Source: Paragordius varius (taxonomy: Eukaryota > Animalia > Nematomorpha). From it: a DNA stretch of 64,000 nt. The notes beneath the pieces were generated by a model. The model was not told the DNA's origin, did no database searches, and was given only the letters and a program-made list of their open reading frames with translations. The stretch is from the NCBI GenBank assembly GCA_964247055.1, contig OZ176054.1, positions 1,178,001-1,242,000 of the forward strand, read 5' to 3'. Made by a program: the position numbers and the translations under genes. Each line of letters starts with the position of its first letter. Positions within the stretch are counted from its first letter, which is position 1. This document shows positions 25,050-40,068 of the stretch, piece after piece.

Positions 25050-29621
<4,572 letters not shown>

Positions 29622-30157
29622 ACTTGATATGTTTTTACTATTTTAAATAAATAATTTGCGCAATTTTATGGGTAAAAATGACAATTCAATTCTACGGAAT
29701 ATTTTGAGTTAGATTTCCGAGAAGATCCAAATTTTAAGTAATTATGACAAAACGATTAGTATTCATTATGTGTACCATTAGCATTTCAAATATGTCCTTG
29801 AACACTTCAAGTTTCACCACCAACACTTTTATTAGTTCTAAATAAGAAATTTTTTTTAATTATCTTGCGAAATTAATAATTATCACAGAATTATGTTTAA
29901 AGTAACATTTATTAGGGTATTAATTATTTGGATATACATAAAATTAAAATTGAATATAATTAATAAAAGGAGTATACTTAAAATAAGTCATATAAGGATA
30001 AAAGTACAATGAGTGTAGAATGTATTTGCTAAAAAATCGCACCGGGAAATTAGAATTAAGAATTATGGACTTAGTTAAAAATGTACTGGCATAATTTACA
30101 CATAATTTTTTTTACAAAAAAAACATGTGTAACAATATTTTACCCTCCTAAAATTAA

Positions 30158-33100
30158 TTATAAAACAGATAATAGGAAATAAGTGACATATATGAATATA
30201 GGTATGCTTTGTAAAAACAGTGATATTCCAACATTATTGTTTGAGGCAGAATTTCTTTTGTCAATGACTGAGTTGTTTGTTACAAGGGGAACGTTCATTT
30301 GTTCATTTTCATGGATCTTAACAAAATCCATATCGTTTGTGGGACATTGCATGGCTTGACATAAGAGAACAGACTCGCGCGTACAGGCACATGTTTGACA
30401 TGATCGCATATCATTGCTCATTAGAGTTATCTTTTCTGGTGAACCGGCCACATAGTATTGTCCGTTGGCATAGCAACCTATATAACGAGGATTATATTAT
30501 TAAAATTTTATTAATGTACCATTATTTATAAATTAGTGGTAACAAGCTACACGAATGGCTTCGCGGGTCGCATTCGAAATTTGTGTGAGCATAAATGAAT
30601 TTTTTATTAAATTTCAAACATAAGATTGCAAAATCAAAAACTTATTTAAAAAATTTAATTGAAAAGATTAATTTCACTTATATTTTGTGCGGATATTATT
30701 GCAGATTATGGATTTTCAAATTTTTTGCGGCCTGCACATAATATGTCGGAAGTTGGGCACCTCTAATTTAAATCGAATTAAATTATAGGATACAAAAATA
30801 TTTAATTTACCAAATAAGTTTATTGTCATGTTTTGTGGATTAATGTTAAGAAGGTTTCTCGTTTCCATCGATCGCAATTTATCCATCAATGCTTTGTTGT
30901 GTGTGAGATTCGGCGAACTCATAAAAACTACTGTTTCAATTATAACACTTCCAGGTCTACAAAGTGATAATATATTAAAAGTTGACATTATAATTACTTT
31001 TTAATTTAACAAGCCAGTTATTTAACCCATATATAAGTATGATTAGAAATCGCTATTATTTCATTTATTTTTAATTTAAAAATAATCCTTTAAAACAAAA
31101 ATTGAGTGGGTAACGACGAGAGTTTGTAATGTAAATGATGTTAGAATCGTCGTAAAATAACGCAAAAATAAAAATATAATTTATTAATTCTCAAATTTTC
31201 GCCATTGGCATCATCAGGAGATTAGTTAAGAAAAATATATAAAATATAATAAAATAAAAATTAAATTAAAAAAATGAACAAAATCATGGTTGATATTACT
31301 TATATAGGAAAAAAATCACAAAATAACCGTTAGTGATTAATTAATATTTTTTAGCTAATCCAAAAACCGTACCTCAGATTAGCAATTTTAACGTTTTGGA
31401 ACTCAGGCAAATTCATAAGCGCATTTCTCAGCTAACAAAATGTAAAAAATATATTAACGTGATATATTTTTAATTTAACAGGAAATACAGAAATATTGGT
31501 ACCTTTATCTCTAATTCATTTTTGTATAACTGAGTTTCAGGTGAATCCAAAACACTGTATTCCCCTTTCCAAGGCTCATCAATTGCAAATGATAAATTAT
31601 AAACTGACCCAATTGGGTTTTCTGTTAAGATAGTTCCCAACGCGACCGGTATCAAAGTTGTCCCATCTAAAAAAATTAGTTTATTTTTCCATATATTTTT
31701 TTGAATCAAAAATGAAATTAAACTAACTTACTTTCTGGCACACATTTTTTGATACAGATTTTAGTGTTTGTAACATACGGCGGTATTCTATGTTTTTGTA
31801 TGGTTCCATCTTCATTCCTATTCAATCATATCAAATATGATAACGATAGATAAAAATACAAAATTAAATAAATCAATCTACTTACCATTCTCCCGTATCG
31901 TAGGGAAAGAAAAAATAGCCACAATCATTGTCCGAATCTCCGAATTGAAAATCGTGGAATTTATCTTCCGTTTGACGTTTTCGCTTAAATTGAATCGTTG
32001 TAACATTGTTGATAAATGATCCATTTATGTCATATATGTTCTGCATGGAATCTTTAGTCGGTTGGCTATAACCTTCAATCCATCTACAAAAAAAATTAAA
32101 TGGGAGTCCTTTATTTTTATAACCAAATGCTTACAGTAACAATTAATGCAGACAAAACGTAATAATATAAATATTTTTTTTCAAAAGACAACAATCTTTT
32201 TTTATCGCTTCATTTTTCGTATAAAAAATATTTAGCTTCAATGAAAAGATACATATGTTTTTTTAATAAGCGTTTTTACTTCATAATTTGCAATATATTA
32301 AGTTTAAAAAAATAGGTTTAAAAAGTACAGCGGTTTTTAACAAAAAAAATTCGCCTTTATATTTTCCGTTTTGTCCGTTAATTTTCATTTTTTACTATAT
32401 ATTATGTTGACATGACATTCAGATTATATTAATCCCTGGCTCCTAGAAAAAAAGGTAAAATTCTTTTGTATAGCATAACTTTTTACCCATCAAAAAGTAC
32501 GACCATGTTATCGCTCGTAATCCATCCATATATAATATCCGTATTTGGCATATTTCGTTGATTAGAAAATCCAATGCCTGTCCATCGGTTCATACTGTTA
32601 CGAGCTTGAATCGTAAATTGAATATCTTCCTCTGAGTCTCCAACCAACTTCCAAGAAGCATGATATTGGCAATTTTTACTTTTATCACAGCCTGTGGGAT
32701 AACTCCATTCCATTATATTACCTGGGTTAGCATTTGCGCATTTTGTGTTTTGAGCGACAAAACTGTTTGTGGCTAAACCACTTTGAGGGGGAGAGGGCAT
32801 AGGAAAATCTGGGGAAAAATAAATTTAATTAATCAATTTTAGAAATTTTTTAGCTAAAATAATTAATTTTAGTGTACCTAAAAAATTTATAGCATCCGTT
32901 CCTCGTAAATTTCGACTTGTCCCATGATATTTGAGTTCATCATCCCGATAAAAGGCTTTATCCTTGGCACTTCCCTTTTTACAAAAATAAATTTATGACT
33001 CAATGTTTTATTTGATGCTTAAATATATATATTATAAAATTTGCCCGATCGTTTTAATGATTTTTTGTATTTTAAACTTCTAAAATTCTATTTTCGAGAA

Positions 33101-36100
33101 ACCCTAATCAACCATATTTTATTTTCCAAAGCAAAAAATGATAATATTTACCATTTCGATCCCCGAAGGTGGATCATGAACGGGTTTAGTTACGTCTTGA
33201 CCGGTGGCCCAACTTACGTGCATTATATCATTGATAAATGTATGGTCAGCCAAATCAGAACCTATTTGCACACAAATATATTTCATATATTCCATTCCTT
33301 AAATTACGATACCATTTTTCTATCGAAAGCAACACTTTTTCAACCAAACGCAACACTTTTTTGAGCAAACGCAATATTTTTCAAACAAATGGAACGTTTA
33401 TTCATCCAAAAGCAACGGAATTAGAAACATTGCGTTTGCTTGAAAAGTTGTTTTAGTTGAAAAAATGTTGCGTTTGATTGAAAAAGTGTTACTTTTGACT
33501 GAAAAATGGTATATACACCCTCTTGAAAATCACGTTTTATACTAAGGTAAAAACTCTGTTCTAATGGTATTGATGATATGGTATAATCATTTTTACTATT
33601 TCCATTTACCTCATGTTCTAAATGAGAAGCTAAATATGGTGGTACGCAGTATTTAAAAATTTATTGCCAACAAAAATAAGACCCGACTTTAAAAATTAAT
33701 TTTCCTACACAATAAAATGAAAAAATGTACAATATAAGATACTTTTTAGTTTGCGTCTAAACATGATTGTCGTTTGTCCATTGCGTTCGAAGCCAAGGGC
33801 AGCTGTTATATCATCTCGACCCCCAAAAACTGTATCCAACATGGGTGTTGATCTGTCCCGGGAATAATAATCTCCTATTCGAAACAAATTTCCTCTCGCC
33901 ATACCAATCACAACATCTAAACATTCCATTGGGTGAATGGCATCCCCTTCTGAAGACATAAAAATAAAAATTTGGGCTGTTTCAAAATTTCGTGTTACAC
34001 TTAATTTGTAAATCATAAATATAGATAAAATGTTTTAATTAATCCGATGAAATGTTGGGCAAAGGCAAAAATATTGAAGACAATTTATGTAAACACATTT
34101 CTTTAAATTAATTACTCCATAAAGTGCAATCGCCAAGTTCAATGTCTATTACAATCTTAATATCTAACATAAGACAAAATAATTGAAACCTTTTCATCAA
34201 AAATATGGCATTCTTTTATTAATCCATAATCTAAATAACTTAGGTAAGAAAATTCTAAGATTGATACTTGTTGCTATGTTATTCAAATCTTCTTCGGAAA
34301 CAGGAATATTTCCAGACGGTACTATTGGGATGACACTGGCAGATAATTTTGGTTCAGCATTTGGTTCAGCGATGATTTCCGAGAGGGGTTGATTATTGTT
34401 GAGGGTTGGTTCATTTAAAGGAGGAGTTTTTATTGTCTCCGGTTCTGTAACGGGGGCTTTATTAACCTTTGGCGTATTTTCAGGCACTGGTTCTGATTTG
34501 GTTTGGGAAAGAGGTTCACTTTTTCCCACGCTTTCGGGTTCTGCTCTCACAGAATTAGCCGAAGGTCCTCTGAGTGGAATAGTAGAACTCGATTTAGCAA
34601 CAACTTCATTATTGGCCAACGTTTTTTCCGCAATAGGTTGAGGAGGTGGTAAATTTTCAGGAATTGCTTCCTTAACAGCGAAAGGAACGACGGGTTTAGG
34701 ATTGTTTTCCCCGGCTGGAATTATTTCTAGGGAAATATAATTGATTTATAGTAAGCCTATAAAATTTTTGTAAAAAGCCATAATTGAAAAACTAAATAAG
34801 TGAAGGCACCTGGTTTAGCCGGTTTTAATGGATTGTTTTCAGCACTTGGTAAATTTTCAGATGACGGGATTTCTGCTTTAGGAGCCCCAATTATTATATG
34901 AGAATTCGTATTTTTATCATGCAAAACCATAGAAAGTTCTAGTGGTTTTTCAGTTGTCAGAGCTTTGTCCATGAAAGAATCCATTGTTAGCGCGTTTGTC
35001 ACTATTTCTATAGGACGTTGAGTGGTAGACAAACTGTAAATTACATAAAAATATATAAAATATACTGCTGTGGAGCTGACTAAAATTATTACCTATGGGA
35101 AAAAATTTTGAGATACCTTAAAAATATTTTTTTTGTTAATAAATTAATATTGAATTTTAAAAATAATATAATAACCAATAAGATCCCTATAGATATTTGA
35201 AAAAATTAATAAAAAATAAATAATTTAATTCTTTTATTTTTTTGTTATTGAGTGTTTTATTATATTTCACACTTTAAACCAGGCGTGTCCAACACAAATG
35301 GCTTCGCGAACCGCATTTTTGACTTAAAAAACCCGGCAGGCGGCCATGTAAATATATATGGGCATTCATAAGGAATTTATCAAACTTTAAACATAAAACT
35401 GTAAAATGCAATACAAAATGGTAATTTTTCTAGTTCCATGCCAATTGGATAGACTTATTTTGAATTGTTTAGGAAATATCAATATTAGGAAAATTTTGTT
35501 AGCATATTTTTATAATATATGGATTCCAAAATTTTCGCGGGCCGGGTCCTGACCACCTCTGCTTTAAACGATAACTTAAAAATTAGGGCCTTATCAAAGA
35601 ATTGCAAAAACGCAATAATGATCAGCATGATTAAATAGGTATATAGCTGTTAAATAAATTATTATATGAGGGTCTAAGTTATTAAAATTTATATAAAAAA
35701 TTTACGTTCCTAATTTAACTTACATTTGTCTCTTGCGTCGCTTGGATGTTTCTGGTTTTGGCTCATTTTTTGGAATGACATTTTCATTTAACATAATTTC
35801 TTTTTGCTGTAAACGTTGAACTTCCGCTTTCGGCAAATTAGATTCGGCTACAGGGTTTTGAGGATTAGAAGATGTTTCGGGATTTGGAGCTTTGCTTAAT
35901 TGTTCAGATATTGGTAATATTTTAACAATTTTCATTTTTTCGGGTTCTGAGGCAGGGGGACTGTTTAGATTACCGCCTTCCGAAATGGGCACAAATAAAT
36001 TATGTTTCGGTTCTTGACTTTCGGCTTTTGGTCTTAAGAGTGTTTCAGGCTCTGATACAGCAACACCTGATGGTTGGGATCCTTCAGCTATGGGTTCATT

Positions 36101-39100
36101 ACGAGGAACACCACTTTCTGCTTTTGGAACACTTTTTGATATCCTATTGTGATTCGGCAATGGAAGTAACGGAATACCACCAGTTTGTAAATTTATTGGA
36201 TACATTTTGCAGTTACTTCGGAGATCTGAATAGAAGATATTTTGTAGCATAAAATCAAAGTTGTGGTGAAAAAAAATGGAGTGTGGTTAAAAAAACATAC
36301 TGTTCGGTCTCCATCCTAGAGCGACCCAATTGGTGGTATTAGCTTGTAAAACTATTTCGATTTCTTTTGCATTTGAGCCCAGGGTTGAGTCTGGTAAAAG
36401 CTTCCAATACATATTGTATCTTGGTGACAATTGTCGCGATTTATAAAATCGTGGATCAAAATTCCATTTATTTAAATCCGTTTCTAAAACAATTTCGGAT
36501 GACATCATATAAAATTGTTGGGCTTAATTAAAAACGGTTATAATTATAAATTATTATATAAAAACTTTTAATTTTAAATTTCATCAATTTAATATTTATT
36601 TTGGAGTATGTATGAAACTAACTTTTTTGACAATGGGTACCAATGTAACCCCATTTGCAGAAACAAATCTTGCTGGGGGATGATGTCGCATTTATATCAA
36701 TACATTCACCATTATTGCAATCAGCATTGTTAGTGCATTCATCTATTTTTACAAATTAACATAGTTTATTTAAAATAAAATAGTTGAATTAAATTAGTAC
36801 AAAGGTGTTTACTAAATTTTTCACAAAATTCTCCGTTAAAGCCTTTGTTGCAGAGACAAACCCCTGCTTGAAGTTGTCCATTGGGTTGGCATCGGTCCAA
36901 ATCTAATAATAAAACCAGATTTTTAGTAAATAATTTTCTATTTTGTATTGGTATAGAATTCTAATGTTTATTTTTCTTTCCGTTTAAAATTTTACCAAAG
37001 CCGATATGGGACTTTATGAATTTTTATAATCCTTTTGTTTTATTTTATTTTAAATTGAATCCGACCTCTCTCAATATGCAATAAATAAAACGCTTCTGAT
37101 TAACTACCTTTTTGGATTCTAACATCCGCACAACTCCAAAAAATATATCCGTGTGGTCCAGCTGTCCATTCCTTGGCTTGTCTTGTTAGGCGAATGAAGC
37201 AATCATCACAGGTTAAATTGGTTGGAAGTGTTACTCTATGACTTTGAGTCCTAAAAAATAGTAAAAAAAAATTAACTCCAGAAACCGATTATAGAGCTTA
37301 ACGCATATTTTCATCCAAGCTAATGTTATTTATAACATAAATAATTTAAAGGTATTTTTATTACACAGAATATATCCTATTTTTGCGTAAATCATAATTG
37401 AAGGGTAATATGTTGAGCTTCAGAATGATGTAAAATTTATTTTAAAGGTAAGTTACTTACGTGACATCAATGTTTTGGAGATATACGGTGCCATTGTGGT
37501 CATCGCTTGGGGCCAAAGTGGCTAAAACCTTGTTGTTTGAATCAATCAATTCAATGCGATATCCTCCCTATATATATATATATATAAACAAATCATATAT
37601 GATAATATGAAATTTGATTTTACAATACTATACATCATTTAAATTTTATATAAAATTACTTGATGTGGATATCCCAAGTGCCAAATGACATCAAATGTGG
37701 AATTTGGGATGAGATTGGTTACAGGTCCTCTTTCTATCACCATAAAAAAATAATTTTTATACATATTCAATTTAATTTGAACAGCCATTTGCATTAAACA
37801 AACAAAATAAACCGATAAAAAAAGTAGATCTCATCACTACATATTCTGTTAACATTAATATAGTTTAAATATTAAAAATATGGAACGTTTGAGAGTTTCA
37901 ATTTAGCCTCAAAAAGCTCTAAAATATTAAAACTCCAAAGATATTATTTAATATAACTCAAATTAATCGAGGGTACTGCTGTACCGCTCTCTGATACTGA
38001 TACTGATATGCATGACGTGACTAGGGCCATTTTTAAAAAAGTGCACCATGTGATAGACTTCAATCATATATGTACAAGATATAATCATTTCAAATATTTT
38101 AAGTAATCTATATAAAATGGTTTTGATAGATTTTATTATGATAAATAGTCTTTACGTAATATTTTTATCATATATACATTGTGTAATTTAGGACTGAACT
38201 ATTGATTTAGTAATAAGCGCTGAAAAGTTCGACCCTTCTTTTATTTATTGAACTAAAATATATCCCACTTATAAAATGAAATTAATATGAATTGTGCTGC
38301 GTTTTATATATAAGGAAGACGTAACTGGGGCTAAATTAACCAATATTTCAGGATTTTTAATTTAAGCTTAGGTTTTGATTCATCAAACCTTATCAAATTG
38401 TGAATTGTATTTTTTTGGCCAAAATCACTAATTAATAAACATTTAACAAAAAATAATATTATATTATAAATACAAAACGTTGCAAAACAATGTAACAATT
38501 TAAGGGCAAGAAGATATATTATATTTCACACCCAAAATGCATAATATCGATTTTTTAATTTATATAGAAAACGCAAAAACACCTTTCTGGATAATTTGAT
38601 TTGCGGGTATTTTCACACTGTAATATAATAGTAATATATATGTCATAAATAATTCTAGTATGTATTGCCAATTTTTGTAACCATTTATTTTCAGAACCCT
38701 CTAAGGCGCCCAAAACATAATAATGGAGGATTAAACATAATAAAAATTCATTATATCATGATTTTATTGATTTATGCTCTCCAGATATTTTACCCAACAT
38801 AGTGTTCTTAAAATTAAGACTTACTGTTGATTTGTCATGTTAATAAAGTTTCTCAATGTCATTATTAATAAATTTTTGAATAAGTAAAAGGCATCATAAA
38901 TTAATCCTATATATTCCTGGAATATTATATATGTAATAAATTATTTAACATATTTACTATTATAACCTATATATTCGTACATATGAAAAAAAATCAATTT
39001 TAACAACAAAATGTGTTTAAAGATAGACAAAAATGATAAAAAAAATTGTTAATTTTGAATATACAAATTAGTCGAAAACAAAGCGAAATTATATCACAAA

Positions 39101-39763
39101 ATAGAGTTAAGCTTAATTAAAGTTATCTATAAAAGGTTAAAAAATCTTCTTAGCAGTATGTGTTTGATTAAATCATCTTTTTTATGGTAAGAAAAAAACT
39201 TATTTAACAACAACAAACACAGATATTTGAATTTTTAAAGTTTAATTAATATAAATGTTTGGTCGTATAGACTTATAAGATTACAGTATGGTAAAAAACC
39301 ATAAATAATTGCAATTAAACACTTTCCAATATTTTAACATTAATAATATTTATTTGATATGGACCAAAGCTTTTTTACATCATACGCTACGGTATTATTT
39401 TATACCATGCTTTTCGTATTAACATGTCGTTAGTATTAGCCTTTACCTTGAAAATAACTGTCTGACAATGTGTCATTTTATTTATGTGTTTGAAGTGGTA
39501 GTAAATAGTTGTTTAAATTGTATTTTTTAATAAAAAATCATTTCAAATAGATGTAAGTTTTTTTCTATCTAAAAATTTGATCAAATACTTGACGGAACTC
39601 CACAAGGTCCAGAGGTTCTAACATTGTCTAAAAAGTCGAATTGGTATGAGCGTGCAGGGGGATATATAATCCTTATGTGAGCTTTTGTAAAATGATTCCA
39701 ATTTAAAAGGAATATTAACAGAAATCGCCAATATGAAGAAATATGTTTATATGTGATAGCCAT
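30158..39763 (-). CDS. Large secreted, probably GPI-anchored nahoda-like protein: signal peptide, His-brace LPMO-like domain, 2 EGF-like, DOMON with long insertion, DOMON, SEA-like, VWC-like, hydrophobic tail
   Basis: Spliced exons read MAITY..FTKA|HIRIIYPPARSYQFDFLDNVRTSGPCGVP..WHLGYPHQ|GGYRIEL..CDDCFIRLTRQAKEW..YIFWSCADV, then two Cys-rich EGF exons. DOMON motifs follow: WVALGWRP..HPMECLDVVIGMARG..DYYSRDRSTP..RRKL..DELKYHG and WTGIGFS..NMPNTDII..QKH. Then PGSVII (SEA GSVVV-like), CQTCAC..LCQAMQC and NSASNN + hydrophobic C-terminus. Confidence 0.88.
30534..30765. mobile_element. hAT-type MITE in an intron, same family as 35280-35561
   Basis: It shares acacgaatggcttcgcgg..cgcatt with the 35280 copy and ends gttgggcacctcta. 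The TSD is imperfect. Confidence 0.55.
33310..33511. mobile_element. ~200 bp fold-back MITE with internal aaacgcaacacttttt sub-repeats
   Basis: Ends read taccatttttctatcgaaagcaacactttttc ... gaaaaagtgttacttttgactgaaaaatggta. The arms consist of inverted tandem sub-repeats. Confidence 0.7.
35280..35561. mobile_element. hAT (Charlie-like) MITE with a perfect 8-bp TSD
   Basis: Ends read ctttaaac|CAGGCGTGTCCAAC ... GACCACCTCTG|ctttaaac. Another end of this family (ccattcgtgttggacaccctt) lies at ~13710-13731. Confidence 0.82.
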
Positions 39764-40068
39764 TGAATACAATAAAATTAAAATCTTCAAGTCCGATTTC
39801 TATATTAAGTCATGATATAATATGTGAAGATGCGACGCGCTACCTTTAAAAAAACGAATTCAAAAATAAAATATGTGATAGAAAATAATCATTAAATTAA
39901 ACCTTGTATATATGTGAATAAAAATAATATAAATGTTATTACAATTAAATATTATAAATATATACCTGATTATATATATATACACAAAAAATTAGTATAT
40001 AAAGGTAACAAATAATCTTTTAATGTGATCACGAAAAAAAATATTTAAAAATATTGACAATCCTTTGA

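What the first reader, a model, noticed from the sequence alone, without database searches (positions are those of the whole stretch)
37106..39763. Histidine-brace LPMO-like domain at the mature N-terminus of an animal EGF/DOMON protein
Predicted signal cleavage (..FTKA|H) makes His the first residue, in an HxxxxxPxxR context typical of LPMO/X325-Bim1 folds. A second His lies in WHLGYPHQGG. The domain ends CxxC..RQAKEW..YIFWSCADV, echoing the LPMO C..C.LQW.W....[Y/F]xxCAD.I strand, with Phe at the axial position as in many AA10 enzymes. This implies a copper site in a nahoda-like cuticle or surface protein distinct from arthropod AA15. The motifs are seen directly; copper binding is inference.
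Basis: partly seen in the sequence, partly recalled or inferred. Interest (0 to 1): 0.8.

Follow-up and report, generated by a model that had tools for sequence, protein, structure and literature searches.

The report
LPMO-like copper domain on nahoda
Four exons encode a signal peptide and a small domain with the fold and the two copper-holding histidines of chitin/cellulose-oxidising LPMO enzymes, at the tip of a conserved animal cell-surface protein (nahoda family) that also carries haem-type DOMON domains. No paper found here describes this combination in any detail.

Summary

- **Gene model.** Minus-strand exons 39763-39589, 37733-37660, 37567-37461 and 37250-37108 all have GT-AG introns. 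They encode a 28-aa signal peptide and a 138-aa domain that starts at His1.
- **Family.** The domain belongs to a bilaterian family whose insect members NCBI names "nahoda". Taxa seen are arthropods, nematodes, Nematomorpha, annelids, molluscs, hemichordates and a tunicate.
- **Conservation.** In 103 unique domains His1 is 103/103, the second His (YPH) 101/103 and the Phe in FWSCADV 101/103. The domain is always directly behind a signal peptide and is never internal.
- **Homology to AA15.** A family profile hits only Thermobia AA15 among solved structures (E 2.8e-6). His54 aligns with His91 and the Phe with axial Tyr184.
- **Fold.** The AlphaFold model of the 64%-identical Gordionus orthologue has pLDDT 87. 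Its top 50 Foldseek matches are all LPMO or LPMO-like. The best is AA15 5MSZ at Z 13.1 with 137 residues aligned from residue 1.
- **Pfam.** Scores are borderline for both LPMO_10 and BIM1-like_dom.
- **Limits.** Copper binding, catalysis and electron supply from the DOMON domains (invariant Met/His) remain inferred.
- **Prior notice.** I found only passing mentions in two bioinformatic papers. The scan also noted this stretch before, as s1-305308.

The parts
39680..39763 (-). Start codon (39763-39761) and 28-aa signal peptide MAITYKHISSYWRFLLIFLLNWNHFTKA
   Evidence: Sequence and spliced translation. The hydrophobic core scores 2.72 on an 8-mer hydropathy window, with T at -3 and A at -1. Every homologue has a hydrophobic leader and a small -1 residue before His. 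No SignalP run was possible.
39589..39679 (-). Rest of exon 1: His1 (39679-39677) and residues 1-30, HIRIIYPPARSYQFDFLDNVRTSGPCGVPS, followed by a GT donor at 39588
   Evidence: H1, P7, R10, D15, D18, C26 and G27 are invariant in the 29-sequence alignment; D18 is 102/103 in the larger set. H-x5-PPAR is the same spacing as DmAA15A HGRLMDPPAR.
37660..37733 (-). Exon 2: residues 31-55, with the second brace histidine His54 (37665-37663) in WHLGYPHQ
   Evidence: His54 is 101/103 conserved and aligns with His91 of TdAA15A; Tyr52 aligns with Ala89.
37461..37567 (-). Exon 3: residues 56-90 (GGYRIELIDSNNKVLATLAPSDDHNGTVYLQNIDV), core beta strands and a variable loop
   Evidence: G56 and G57 are invariant. 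An (AT)n run lies just upstream of the acceptor.
37108..37250 (-). Exon 4: residues 91-138, with C105-x2-C108, RQAKEW (E118, W119), the putative axial Phe128 (37141-37139), C131 (37132-37130) and D133
   Evidence: This exon alone hits Pfam LPMO_10 positions 147-183 (E 0.017). Both Cys of CxxC, and the Cys of CAD, align with Cys in TdAA15A; the Phe aligns with Tyr184. The Phe is 101/103 conserved.
36624..36900 (-). Context: two EGF-like exons (36900-36820 and 36743-36624) directly after the domain
   Evidence: EGF_Teneurin 29.1 bits (cut-off 24.3) for the first; EGF_2/EGF are weak for the second. tblastn with P0002.
33155..36508 (-). Context: DOMON 1, split. The N-half is at 36508-36290 and the C-half at 33959-33741 plus 33259-33155. 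Exons for a long Pro/Glu-rich low-complexity insert lie between them.
   Evidence: Pfam DOMON profile 13-39 (weak) matches the N-half and 41-102 (40.1 bits) the C-half. tblastn with P0002. The same split appears in homologues.
31739..32740 (-). Context: DOMON 2 (exons about 32740-32486, 32082-31885 and 31813-31739), with Met in GFSNQRNMPNTD and His in QKHRIPP
   Evidence: Pfam DOMON 45.6 and 31 bits. Met is 100/100 and His 99/100 in homologues. The fold matches the DBH DOMON and the CDH/PDH cytochrome b domains at Z 12-13.7.
30221..30481 (-). Context: Cys-rich module near the 3' end of the gene. The transmembrane exon was not located in the window.
   Evidence: tblastn with P0002 residues 1261-1339. 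Homologues have one C-terminal TM segment.

Best explanation
**What the region encodes.** Exons 1-4 encode a cleavable signal peptide and a compact 138-residue domain. The domain has the LPMO immunoglobulin-like beta-sandwich fold and is a remote homologue of animal AA15 lytic polysaccharide monooxygenases.

**Which protein it belongs to.** It forms the mature N-terminus of the orthologue of insect nahoda. The source is probably a nematomorph, since the closest homologue is from Gordionus. In most homologues the protein is a type I membrane protein: LPMO-like domain, 2 EGF, a DOMON split by a mucin-like insert, a second DOMON, a SEA-like or Cys-rich region, then a single TM segment.

**How the site would form (inferred).** Signal-peptide cleavage would expose His1. 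Its amino group and imidazole, together with the imidazole of His54, would chelate one copper ion as a histidine brace. Phe128 would sit beneath the metal.

**Likely function (inferred).** The copper centre is most likely redox-active at the cell surface. It would be reduced through the haem-b-type DOMON domain(s) of the same chain, the in-cis equivalent of the cellobiose dehydrogenase cytochrome-to-LPMO relay. The substrate is open: chitin or another matrix glycan, or O2/H2O2.

**Status of each step.** Shown here: the gene structure, the homology, the fold, the conservation and the positional constraint. Inferred: copper binding, redox activity and the electron path.
For: **Gene model.** GT-AG introns at all three junctions, and all 17 family invariants retained.

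**Family and naming.** Source names include 'DOMON-like domain-containing protein nahoda' and 'Nahoda protein'. The closest homologue is Gordionus sp., at 64% identity.

**Conservation in 103 unique domains.** H1 103/103, H54 101/103, axial F 101/103, four Cys 103/103.

**Positional constraint.**
- The His sits at precursor position 16-63 in 134 of 135 full-length hits and at position 4 in one N-terminally truncated model.
- It is always preceded by a hydrophobic leader and a small -1 residue.
- The domain is never internal or duplicated.

**Sequence homology to AA15.**
- The family profile against PDB sequences gives one significant hit, TdAA15A 5MSZ, at E 2.8e-6.
- H54 aligns with His91, the Phe with Tyr184, and three Cys with Cys.
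- Sabbadin et al. 2018 (PMC5823890) state that His1, His91 and Tyr184 form the TdAA15A copper site.

**Fold.**
- AlphaFold model of the Gordionus domain: pLDDT 87, pTM 0.85.
- The Foldseek top 50 are all LPMO or LPMO-like.
- VIA-align: 5MSZ at Z 13.1, rmsd 3.1 A, 137 aligned. Model residue 1 is within the range aligned from the mature N-terminal His of each LPMO.
- ESM Atlas neighbours are LPMO_10 or BIM1-like clusters.

**Pfam on isolated domains.** LPMO_10 matches 29/29 at E<=1, with 17-29 bits in the 11 domains listed individually. BIM1-like_dom matches 26/29.

**DOMON 2.** Met is 100/100 and His 99/100. The non-haem DBH DOMON has Leu at the Met position, while the haem-b domain of CcPDH has Met there. 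The fold ties with CDH/PDH cytochromes at Z 12-13. Several homologues hit Pfam CDH-cyt.

**Membrane anchoring.** A single C-terminal TM segment in most of the 18 homologues scanned.
Against: **Direct evidence is missing.**
- No metal, activity or expression data exist. The RNA-guessed runs of the same species label hold nothing of the stretch.
- The tools gave no coordinates, so the His1-His54 distance in the model was not measured.
- The fold was predicted for the 64%-identical Gordionus orthologue, not for the window's own spliced protein, which could not be passed by reference.
- The loop after His1 (residues 10-34) is modelled at only pLDDT 59-70. It holds the invariant D15/D18, so it may either open or close the copper site.

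**Differences from active AA15.**
- Tyr52 replaces Ala89 next to the metal.
- The Glu two residues before the axial residue in AA15 (QETF in DmAA15B/C, AETF in DmAA15A, QEEY in TdAA15A) is Tyr here. From my own knowledge, that Glu is a second-sphere catalytic residue in some LPMOs.
- The domain has 4 conserved Cys against 5 disulfides in TdAA15A, and is about 57 residues shorter.

**Lineage-specific losses in Heteroptera and one snail.**
- Halyomorpha has Gln for His54.
- Rhodnius has Gln and Rhynocoris has Leu for the Phe.
- Biomphalaria has Asp for E116.

**Borderline family scores.** In full-length proteins LPMO_10 stays below Pfam's cut-off, at about 19 against 23 bits.

**DOMON ambiguity.** DOMON 2 is as close in fold to the non-haem DBH DOMON (Z 13.7) as to the cytochromes.
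Confidence: 0.65

Rival explanations
1. Copper-handling rather than catalytic. The domain would work like fungal X325/Bim1: a membrane-tethered histidine-brace protein whose fourth equatorial position is closed by a carboxylate. It would capture or hand over copper, for example to a Ctr1-type importer. The DOMON haem could serve as a cupric reductase.
For: - Pfam BIM1-like_dom aligns the whole domain (1-131 to profile 3-122) in 26/29 members, with best E 4.6e-7 and 26.7 bits in Clavelina against a cut-off of 27.
- Three lepidopteran orthologues carry PF20238 in the precomputed Pfam lists.
- The compact size (138 aa) is close to LaX325, which matches at Z 10.9.
- D15/D18 are conserved close to His1 in sequence: D15 103/103, D18 102/103.
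- Most homologues are membrane-anchored. The hemichordate and tunicate forms end in a hydrophobic tail that resembles a GPI signal. Bim1 is GPI-anchored (PMC10952591).
- The AA15-type Glu before the axial residue is missing.
Against: - Sequence and fold are both closer to AA15 than to X325. Only 5MSZ is found by the profile search, and Z is 13.1 against 10.9.
- BIM1-like_dom is below its cut-off in all 11 domains whose scores were listed.
- Whether any Asp reaches the copper could not be checked.
- Multiple haem-type DOMONs fit an electron-consuming catalytic centre as well as they fit a reductase.
Confidence: 0.22
2. Metal-free structural or glycan-binding module. This would be an LPMO-derived fold kept for adhesion or chitin binding, as CBM33 was once viewed. 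On this reading the histidines are conserved for folding or binding reasons.
For: - A shared fold does not prove function (note).
- Some heteropteran orthologues have lost His54 or the Phe yet keep the gene.
- The protein has adhesion-type EGF, SEA and mucin-like parts.
Against: - His1 is 103/103 and always exactly at the predicted cleavage site. The domain is never internal. That constraint is hard to explain unless a free N-terminal His is needed.
- His54 and the Phe are each 101/103 across hemichordates, a tunicate and protostome phyla, including insects.
Confidence: 0.08
3. Gene-model artefact. The true start or cleavage site would lie elsewhere (an upstream exon, or a signal anchor as in the longer Gordionus prediction), so that His is not N-terminal in this organism.
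For: - The Gordionus model has 57 residues before the His.
- The window's leader has a short hydrophobic core interrupted by Arg.
- There is no RNA support.
Against: - An in-frame stop lies just upstream of the ORF that holds the ATG.
- The leader meets the -3/-1 rule.
- 135/135 homologues from many independent annotations place a small residue then His right after a hydrophobic segment.
Confidence: 0.05

Closest known systems
AA15 lytic polysaccharide monooxygenases (TdAA15A, PDB 5MSZ; D. melanogaster DmAA15A-D)
   Same: - N-terminal His directly after a signal peptide, in H-x5-PPAR (identical spacing to DmAA15A).
- Second His in a P-H-x-G context, equivalent to His91.
- LP..LTCxxC strand and [FY]-x-x-CAD[VI]-x-I end, with Phe at the axial register as in the Drosophila AA15s.
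- Best match by profile (E 2.8e-6) and by fold (Z 13.1).
   Different: - 138 against about 195 residues. The AA15 loop 'GICDNSGNGALGCGPQE' and most of the region between His1 and the core are absent.
- 4 conserved Cys against 5 disulfides.
- Tyr replaces Ala89, and Tyr replaces the Glu two residues before the axial residue.
- It is a separate orthologous group that is not in the published D. melanogaster AA15 list.
- It is always fused to EGF and DOMON domains and, in most homologues scanned, membrane-anchored. Insect AA15 groups carry at most a Cys-rich tail or one TM (PMC9156745).
X325 / Bim1 LPMO-like copper proteins of fungi (LaX325, PDB 6IBH/6IBI; Pfam PF20238 BIM1-like_dom)
   Same: - Compact LPMO fold with an N-terminal His.
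- Tethered to the cell surface.
- The BIM1-like profile aligns end to end with the domain at near-threshold scores.
- Fold match at Z 10.6-10.9.
   Different: - Animal, not fungal.
- A TM anchor in most members rather than GPI.
- Below the Pfam cut-off.
- The Asp that closes the copper plane in X325 (PMC10952591) has no identified counterpart here.
- Fused to DOMON domains.
Cellobiose dehydrogenase / pyranose dehydrogenase cytochrome b domains (AA8) as electron donors to LPMOs
   Same: DOMON 2 has the same beta-sandwich fold as these domains (Z 12.2-13.0), and homologues keep an invariant Met and a near-invariant His. From my own knowledge, CDH cytochrome domains ligate haem b through Met/His and reduce LPMO copper.
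   Different: - Here the putative cytochrome and the LPMO-like domain are in one polypeptide on an animal cell surface.
- There is no flavin or PQQ dehydrogenase domain, so the electron source is unknown.
- Haem binding is untested.
Dopamine beta-hydroxylase / MOXD1 (DOMON plus copper monooxygenase)
   Same: An animal secretory-pathway protein that combines a DOMON domain with a copper oxygenase domain. The DBH DOMON is the best sequence and fold match of DOMON 2 (E 1.9e-8, Z 13.7).
   Different: - The copper domain of DBH is the two-copper PHM-type fold, not an LPMO fold.
- The DBH DOMON has Leu where this family has the invariant Met.
- The domain order is reversed.

Membership tests
LPMO superfamily (histidine-brace fold) | Immunoglobulin-like beta-sandwich LPMO fold | tested here: met
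   AF2 model pLDDT 87. Foldseek top 50 are all LPMO or LPMO-like. VIA-align Z is 13.1 down to 8.8 for LPMO entries over about 120-137 aligned residues. The model is of the Gordionus orthologue, 64% identical to the window's domain.
LPMO superfamily (histidine-brace fold) | His as first residue of the mature protein | tested here: met
   By sequence logic only. T..A|H follows a hydrophobic leader in the window. His follows a small residue after a leader in 135/135 homologues, and the domain is never internal. No SignalP or proteomics.
LPMO superfamily (histidine-brace fold) | Second copper-ligating His on the core strand | tested here: met
   His54 is 101/103 conserved and aligns with TdAA15A His91.
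LPMO superfamily (histidine-brace fold) | Axial Tyr/Phe three residues before the C-terminal Cys of CAD | tested here: met
   Phe128 (window numbering) is 101/103 conserved and aligns with Tyr184 of TdAA15A. It is in the same register as F in the DmAA15 'ETF.NCAD' motif.
LPMO superfamily (histidine-brace fold) | Cu binding in a T-shaped brace; oxidative cleavage of a polysaccharide | not testable with these tools
   Needs protein chemistry. No model coordinates were available to check the geometry.
CAZy AA15 / Pfam LPMO_10 (PF03067) | Score at or above Pfam's gathering cut-off (23 bits) | tested here: inconclusive
   Full-length P0002 and P0118 score 18.9 and 19.1 bits, below the cut-off. Of 11 isolated domains, scoring 17.1-29 bits, 6 are above the cut-off. 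Only profile positions about 82-183 match. The window's exon 4 alone scores 16.2 bits. None of about 130 precomputed Pfam lists includes PF03067.
CAZy AA15 / Pfam LPMO_10 (PF03067) | AA15 hallmarks: five disulfides, long loops after His1, Ala next to the second His, Glu two residues before the axial residue | tested here: not met
   The family has four conserved Cys and is about 57 residues shorter. Tyr52 aligns with Ala89, and Tyr takes the place of the Glu.
X325 / Bim1 (Pfam BIM1-like_dom PF20238) | Score at or above Pfam's cut-off (27 bits) | tested here: not met
   The 9 domains with a listed hit score 15.3-26.7 bits, and 2 of the 11 listed domains have no hit at E<=0.1. 26/29 match at E<=1, over the whole domain. 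Three lepidopteran orthologues carry PF20238 in precomputed lists.
X325 / Bim1 (Pfam BIM1-like_dom PF20238) | Asp carboxylate as fourth equatorial copper ligand | not testable with these tools
   D15 (103/103) and D18 (102/103) are candidates by position in the sequence only. The loop is modelled at pLDDT 59-70 and no coordinates were returned.
X325 / Bim1 (Pfam BIM1-like_dom PF20238) | GPI anchoring to the cell surface | tested here: inconclusive
   Most homologues have a TM segment followed by a cytoplasmic tail. The hemichordate and tunicate forms end in a hydrophobic segment resembling a GPI signal. The anchor exon was not found in the window.
nahoda orthologous group (EGF + DOMON membrane glycoprotein) | Collinear architecture and best reciprocal-type similarity to proteins named nahoda | tested here: met
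   tblastn of the Gordionus protein covers LPMO-like, 2 EGF, split DOMON, DOMON and Cys-rich parts in order along 39682-30221. Pfam on window exons agrees. Insect members are named nahoda by NCBI or UniProt. D. melanogaster nahoda itself was not retrieved.
Haem-b DOMON / AA8-type cytochrome | Met and His axial haem ligands in a DOMON sandwich | tested here: inconclusive
   Met is 100/100 and His 99/100 in DOMON 2. Met aligns with Met of the CcPDH cytochrome and with Leu of the non-haem DBH. The fold ties between DBH (Z 13.7) and the cytochromes (Z 12.2-13.0). Haem binding itself is untested.

The most novel reading that the evidence does not exclude
Nahoda-family proteins are self-contained extracellular redox machines conserved across Bilateria. 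One or more haem-b DOMON domains relay electrons in cis to an N-terminal histidine-brace copper centre on the cell surface. This would be the first natural LPMO-cytochrome fusion in animals. It would act in one of two ways:
- as a self-priming oxidase or peroxygenase that remodels chitin or another matrix glycan; or
- as the animal counterpart of fungal Bim1, with a built-in cupric reductase feeding copper import.
Probability: 0.3. Interest if true: 0.85.

Novelty: new variant of a known kind. Interest (0 to 1): 0.62.

Why it matters
**Why the family stands out.** LPMOs and their histidine-brace relatives are studied intensively, but in animals the papers retrieved here describe only the secreted or simply anchored AA15 enzymes. 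This is a second animal lineage of the fold. It is compact and conserved across hemichordates, a tunicate and several protostome phyla, including insects. It is always at the mature N-terminus of a membrane-anchored protein, next to DOMON domains that keep haem-ligand-type residues.

**Why the domain combination is suggestive.** It mirrors in one chain the fungal cytochrome-to-LPMO electron relay. It also resembles the tethered copper-acquisition factor Bim1.

**Why it is testable.** The family has a named but functionally unstudied Drosophila member, nahoda. The hypothesis can therefore be tested with fly genetics and with simple copper and haem spectroscopy.

**What the outcome would give.** It would either assign a function to a widespread orphan surface protein or define a new branch of histidine-brace proteins.

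Tried and rejected
1. **Spliced protein in the tools.** It has no reference and read-through is not accepted, so this was not possible. I searched exons separately and used the Gordionus orthologue P0002 as a proxy. The spliced protein was used only inside scripts.
2. **RNA evidence for the splice sites.** No RNA holder was found, and three small RNA-guessed runs of the same species label laid nothing. This is no evidence either way. Read laying was given 2,801 letters.
3. **Multi-stretch top hits of the exon-4 search (P0001, P0003, P0004 and others).** P0001 and P0003, the two I looked up, are bacterial topoisomerase I proteins; I read their repeated hits as zinc ribbons matching the CxxC...C pattern. 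I rejected this class as noise.
4. **My early idea that nahoda might be a cytochrome b561-DOMON protein.** The insect cytb561 survey does not mention it. The homologues scanned show at most one TM segment, at the C-terminus. Rejected.
5. **Single-sequence PDB search with DOMON 2.** It gave only levansucrase noise. The profile search was needed.
6. **Transmembrane exon in the window.** The only hydrophobic hit, near 29987, is preceded by a stop and lies in AT-rich sequence. It remains unresolved.
7. **Phylogeny against canonical AA15, AA10 and X325 sequences.** Not done. Those sequences were available only as text in a paper supplement or in alignment print-outs, and I did not retype them.
8. 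**ESM Atlas feature search.** It gave only sub-0.9 leads (LPMO_10, BIM1-like and SCE4755 clusters). These were used as leads only.
9. **Literature.**
   - No paper describes the domain in nahoda.
   - Voshol et al. [quoted passage not shown]
   - The PreDSLpmo v2 preprint mentions DOMON-bearing candidates that dbCAN3 leaves unassigned.

Full report
**1. What is in the sequence**

The window is AT-rich (GC about 0.24-0.33) and carries a multi-exon gene on the minus strand.

- **Exons.** Reading 39900-36900 on that strand gives four exons with canonical splice sites. E1 is 39763-39589, E2 37733-37660, E3 37567-37461 and E4 37250-37108. A script confirmed an AG acceptor at E2-E4 and a GT donor after every exon, and gave a 166-aa product.
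- **Product.** It consists of a 28-aa leader, MAITYKHISSYWRFLLIFLLNWNHFTKA, and a 138-aa domain that begins HIRIIYPPAR.
- **Motifs.** The domain contains WHLGYPHQGG and ends CDDCFIRLTRQAKEWTAGPHGYIFWSCADVRIQK.
- **Key codons.** His1 is at 39679-39677, His54 at 37665-37663, Phe128 at 37141-37139 and Cys131 at 37132-37130.

**2. Working round the splicing**

The tools take no spliced or read-through protein by reference, so I searched the exons separately.

- **Exon 4 against Pfam.** The 47-aa exon alone gives a weak hit to the C-terminal end of Pfam LPMO_10 (positions 147-183, E 0.017, 16.2 bits).
- **Exon 4 against the protein library.** Against 1.84 billion representatives it found 174 proteins at E<=0.001. 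Many are gene-model fragments. About fifteen are long proteins in which the match sits at residues about 105-190.
- **Noise.** The multi-stretch top hits I looked up (P0001, P0003) are bacterial topoisomerase I proteins; their repeated hits probably come from zinc ribbons, and I treat this class as noise.
- **Closest homologue.** The nearest full-length homologue is an unnamed 1,425-aa protein of Gordionus sp. (Nematomorpha). It is 64% identical to the window's domain, and the next best is 51%. The window is therefore probably from a nematomorph.

**3. The family**

- **Naming.** Word searches with the Gordionus, Drosophila willistoni and Saccoglossus domains and a cluster look-up show one orthologous family. 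NCBI or UniProt name several insect members 'DOMON-like domain-containing protein nahoda', 'Nahoda protein' or 'nahoda'. Most others are 'uncharacterized protein'.
- **Taxa with source names.** These are insects of many orders, crustaceans, chelicerates, a millipede, springtails, nematodes (Steinernema, Romanomermis), Gordionus, annelids (Owenia, Capitella), molluscs (Lottia, Babylonia, Biomphalaria, Elysia), hemichordates (Saccoglossus, Glandiceps) and a tunicate (Clavelina).
- **Vertebrates.** None appeared among the named hits. The searches are length- and word-limited, so I do not claim absence.
- **Architecture.** Signal peptide, this domain, two EGF-like modules, two to seven DOMON domains, often a SEA domain, then one transmembrane segment and a cytoplasmic tail. 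The short hemichordate and tunicate forms end in a hydrophobic segment that looks like a GPI signal.
- **Collinearity in the window.** The Gordionus protein aligns in order from 39682 down to 30221. Pfam on the window's own exons confirms EGF and two DOMON domains.

**4. Conservation**

- **Invariants.** In a 29-sequence alignment the invariant residues are H1, P7, R10, D15, D18, C26, G27, H54, G56, G57, C103, C106, E116, W117, S128, C129 and D131. The window keeps all of them.
- **Larger set.** In 103 unique full-length domains, H1 is 103/103, the YPH histidine 101/103 and the Phe of FWSCAD 101/103. The residue before His1 is G, A, S, T or C in 135/135.
- **Position of the domain.** The domain is never internal or repeated. 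The His lies at precursor position 16-63 in 134 of 135 hits, with one truncated model at 4, and it always follows a hydrophobic leader. That constraint is what a free N-terminal histidine requires.
- **Exceptions.** These cluster in Heteroptera. Halyomorpha has Gln for His54, Rhodnius has Gln for the Phe and Rhynocoris has Leu for the Phe. One Lutzomyia model is probably mis-predicted.

**5. Homology and fold**

- **Profile against solved structures.** The family profile has a single significant hit, Thermobia domestica AA15 (5MSZ), at E 2.8e-6.
- **Residue alignment with TdAA15A.** YPH-GG aligns with APH-GF, so His54 matches His91 and Tyr52 matches Ala89. Both Cys of CxxC and the Cys of CAD align with Cys. 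The Phe aligns with Tyr184.
- **What those residues do in TdAA15A.** Sabbadin et al. 2018 report that His1 and His91 hold the copper, that Tyr184 is the axial residue, and that Phe at that position is typical of chitin-active AA10s and some AA15s. The Drosophila AA15 sequences in their supplement start HGRLMDPPAR and end ETF.NCADV. This is the same spacing and register as here.
- **Model.** AlphaFold on the Gordionus domain with the 29-row alignment gave pLDDT 87 and pTM 0.85. It is weaker (59-70) at residues 10-30.
- **Foldseek.** All 50 top matches are LPMOs or LPMO-like proteins: AA16, AA10, AA11, AA15, AA9 and X325.
- **VIA-align.** 5MSZ ranks first (Z 13.1, rmsd 3.1 A, 137 aligned, 23% identity). 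Then come AA16 (12.1), AA11 and AA10 (about 11) and LaX325 (10.9). In every case the alignment starts at model residue 1 and at the LPMO's N-terminal His.
- **ESM Atlas.** Shape neighbours are LPMO_10 or BIM1-like clusters.

**6. Family membership**

- **LPMO_10 in full-length proteins.** It scores about 19 bits, below the 23-bit cut-off. None of about 130 precomputed Pfam lists carries PF03067.
- **LPMO_10 in isolated domains.** Scores are 17-29 bits, and 6 of 11 are above the cut-off. Only the C-terminal half of the profile is matched.
- **BIM1-like_dom in isolated domains.** Where it hits (9 of the 11 listed domains), it scores 15-26.7 bits against a 27-bit cut-off, but it aligns over the whole domain.
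- **Conclusion.** The domain sits between AA15 and the X325/Bim1 group. Its motifs are AA15-like and its size is X325-like.
- **AA15 hallmarks it lacks.** It has four conserved Cys rather than five disulfides. The loops after His1 are short. Tyr stands in for Ala89, and Tyr in for the Glu that precedes the axial residue in AA15.
- **How I file it.** I place it as a new, compact branch of the LPMO superfamily nearest AA15, not as a plain AA15 member.

**7. How it probably works**

- **Copper site.** The conservation, the position and the fold argue for a histidine brace that binds one copper after signal-peptide cleavage.
- **DOMON 2 conservation.** In the membrane-proximal DOMON, Met66 is 100/100 and His160 99/100.
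- **DOMON 2 profile.** Its best PDB hit is the non-haem DBH DOMON (E 1.9e-8), which has Leu at the Met position. The haem-b domain of Coprinopsis PDH has Met there.
- **DOMON 2 fold.** A model of DOMON 2 (pLDDT 89.7) matches DBH at Z 13.7, the PDH cytochrome at 13.0 and the CDH cytochromes at 12.2-12.5. Several homologues also hit Pfam CDH-cyt.
- **Inference.** I infer, but have not shown, haem-b DOMON domains that could reduce the copper in cis. This would be analogous to the cellobiose dehydrogenase cytochrome and fungal LPMOs.
- **Open points.** The homologues scanned show at most one C-terminal TM segment and no cytochrome b561 domain, so the primary electron source is unknown. Whether the copper centre cleaves a glycan such as chitin, makes or uses H2O2, or merely handles copper like Bim1 cannot be decided from sequence.
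- **For the copper-handling rival.** The missing AA15-type Glu, Tyr52 beside the metal and the conserved D15/D18 loop keep that reading alive.

**8. Prior knowledge**

- **No description found.** Full-text searches found no paper describing this domain in nahoda or in EGF/DOMON proteins.
- **Passing mention 1.** Voshol et al. [quoted passage not shown]
- **Passing mention 2.** The PreDSLpmo v2 preprint mentions DOMON-bearing candidates that dbCAN3 leaves unassigned.
- **AA15 list.** The D. melanogaster AA15 list of Sabbadin et al. names CG42749, CG4362, CG4367 and CG42598, and not nahoda.
- **Insect LPMO15 groups.** Those described by Qu et al. 2022 carry only a Cys-rich tail or one TM segment.
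- **This scan.** It noted the same stretch before, as a possible DOMON-to-His-brace redox chain (s1-305308). It also noted a second EGF/DOMON giant gene elsewhere in this genome (s1-326762).

**9. Limits**

- The fold was predicted for an orthologue, not for the window's own protein.
- No coordinates were available, so the brace geometry is inferred by homology.
- There is no expression evidence.
- No SignalP run was possible.
- The 3' end and anchor exon of the gene were not located.
- Read laying was used once on 2,801 letters.

Noticed in passing
window 27104-29621, + strand: Exon-like ORFs encode a proteasome-type AAA ATPase ([13 protein letters not shown]...; ...[45 protein letters not shown]; ...[26 protein letters not shown]). 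This is a convergent neighbour gene that ends about 600 bases from the last identified exon of the nahoda-like gene.
   Followed up: no
window 36508-33155, - strand: The first DOMON domain is split between Pfam profile positions 39 and 41, that is between WVALGWRPN and HPMECLDVVIGM. The intervening exons encode several hundred residues of Pro/Glu/Ser-rich low-complexity sequence. Homologues show the same split, with only the C-half detected. So a long disordered insert sits in the loop just before the putative haem Met.
   Followed up: partly
proteins P0255, P0249/P0250, P0157 (Halyomorpha, Rhodnius, Rhynocoris): Heteropteran orthologues have lost putative copper-site residues while keeping His1 and the rest of the protein. 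His54 is Gln and EW is KK in Halyomorpha. The axial Phe is Gln in Rhodnius and Leu in Rhynocoris. This may be a lineage-specific relaxation of the site.
   Followed up: partly
proteins P0101, P0067, P0129 (Saccoglossus, Clavelina, Glandiceps): The hemichordate and tunicate members are short (657-771 aa). They end in a hydrophobic segment at the very C-terminus, which suggests a GPI signal. Most protostome members scanned have a TM segment plus a cytoplasmic tail.
   Followed up: no
proteins P0001, P0003, P0004, P0029, P0041, P0090, P0100: The 47-aa exon-4 query (CxxC...W...C) hits 6-17 stretches in each of these proteins. The two I looked up (P0001, P0003) are bacterial topoisomerase I proteins, so the hits probably come from tandem zinc ribbons. 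They ranked at the top of the exhaustive search although unrelated. This is a trap for short Cys-motif queries.
   Followed up: yes
window 37559-37597: An (AT)n microsatellite lies directly upstream of the exon 3 acceptor. Read laying skipped it as a repeat.
   Followed up: no
window 31500-31610 and 30221-30481, - strand: A weak SEA-like stretch and a Cys-rich module (CxxCxC...C..C) follow DOMON 2, as in the Gordionus protein. The transmembrane exon expected after them was not found before the neighbouring gene.
   Followed up: partly
run X3 (organism B) laid on window 37000-39800: DNA contigs of a second organism label cover parts of the stretch, including intronic pieces. Some are 100% identical and others 85-95%. 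This suggests a very close relative or a mislabelled sample.
   Followed up: no
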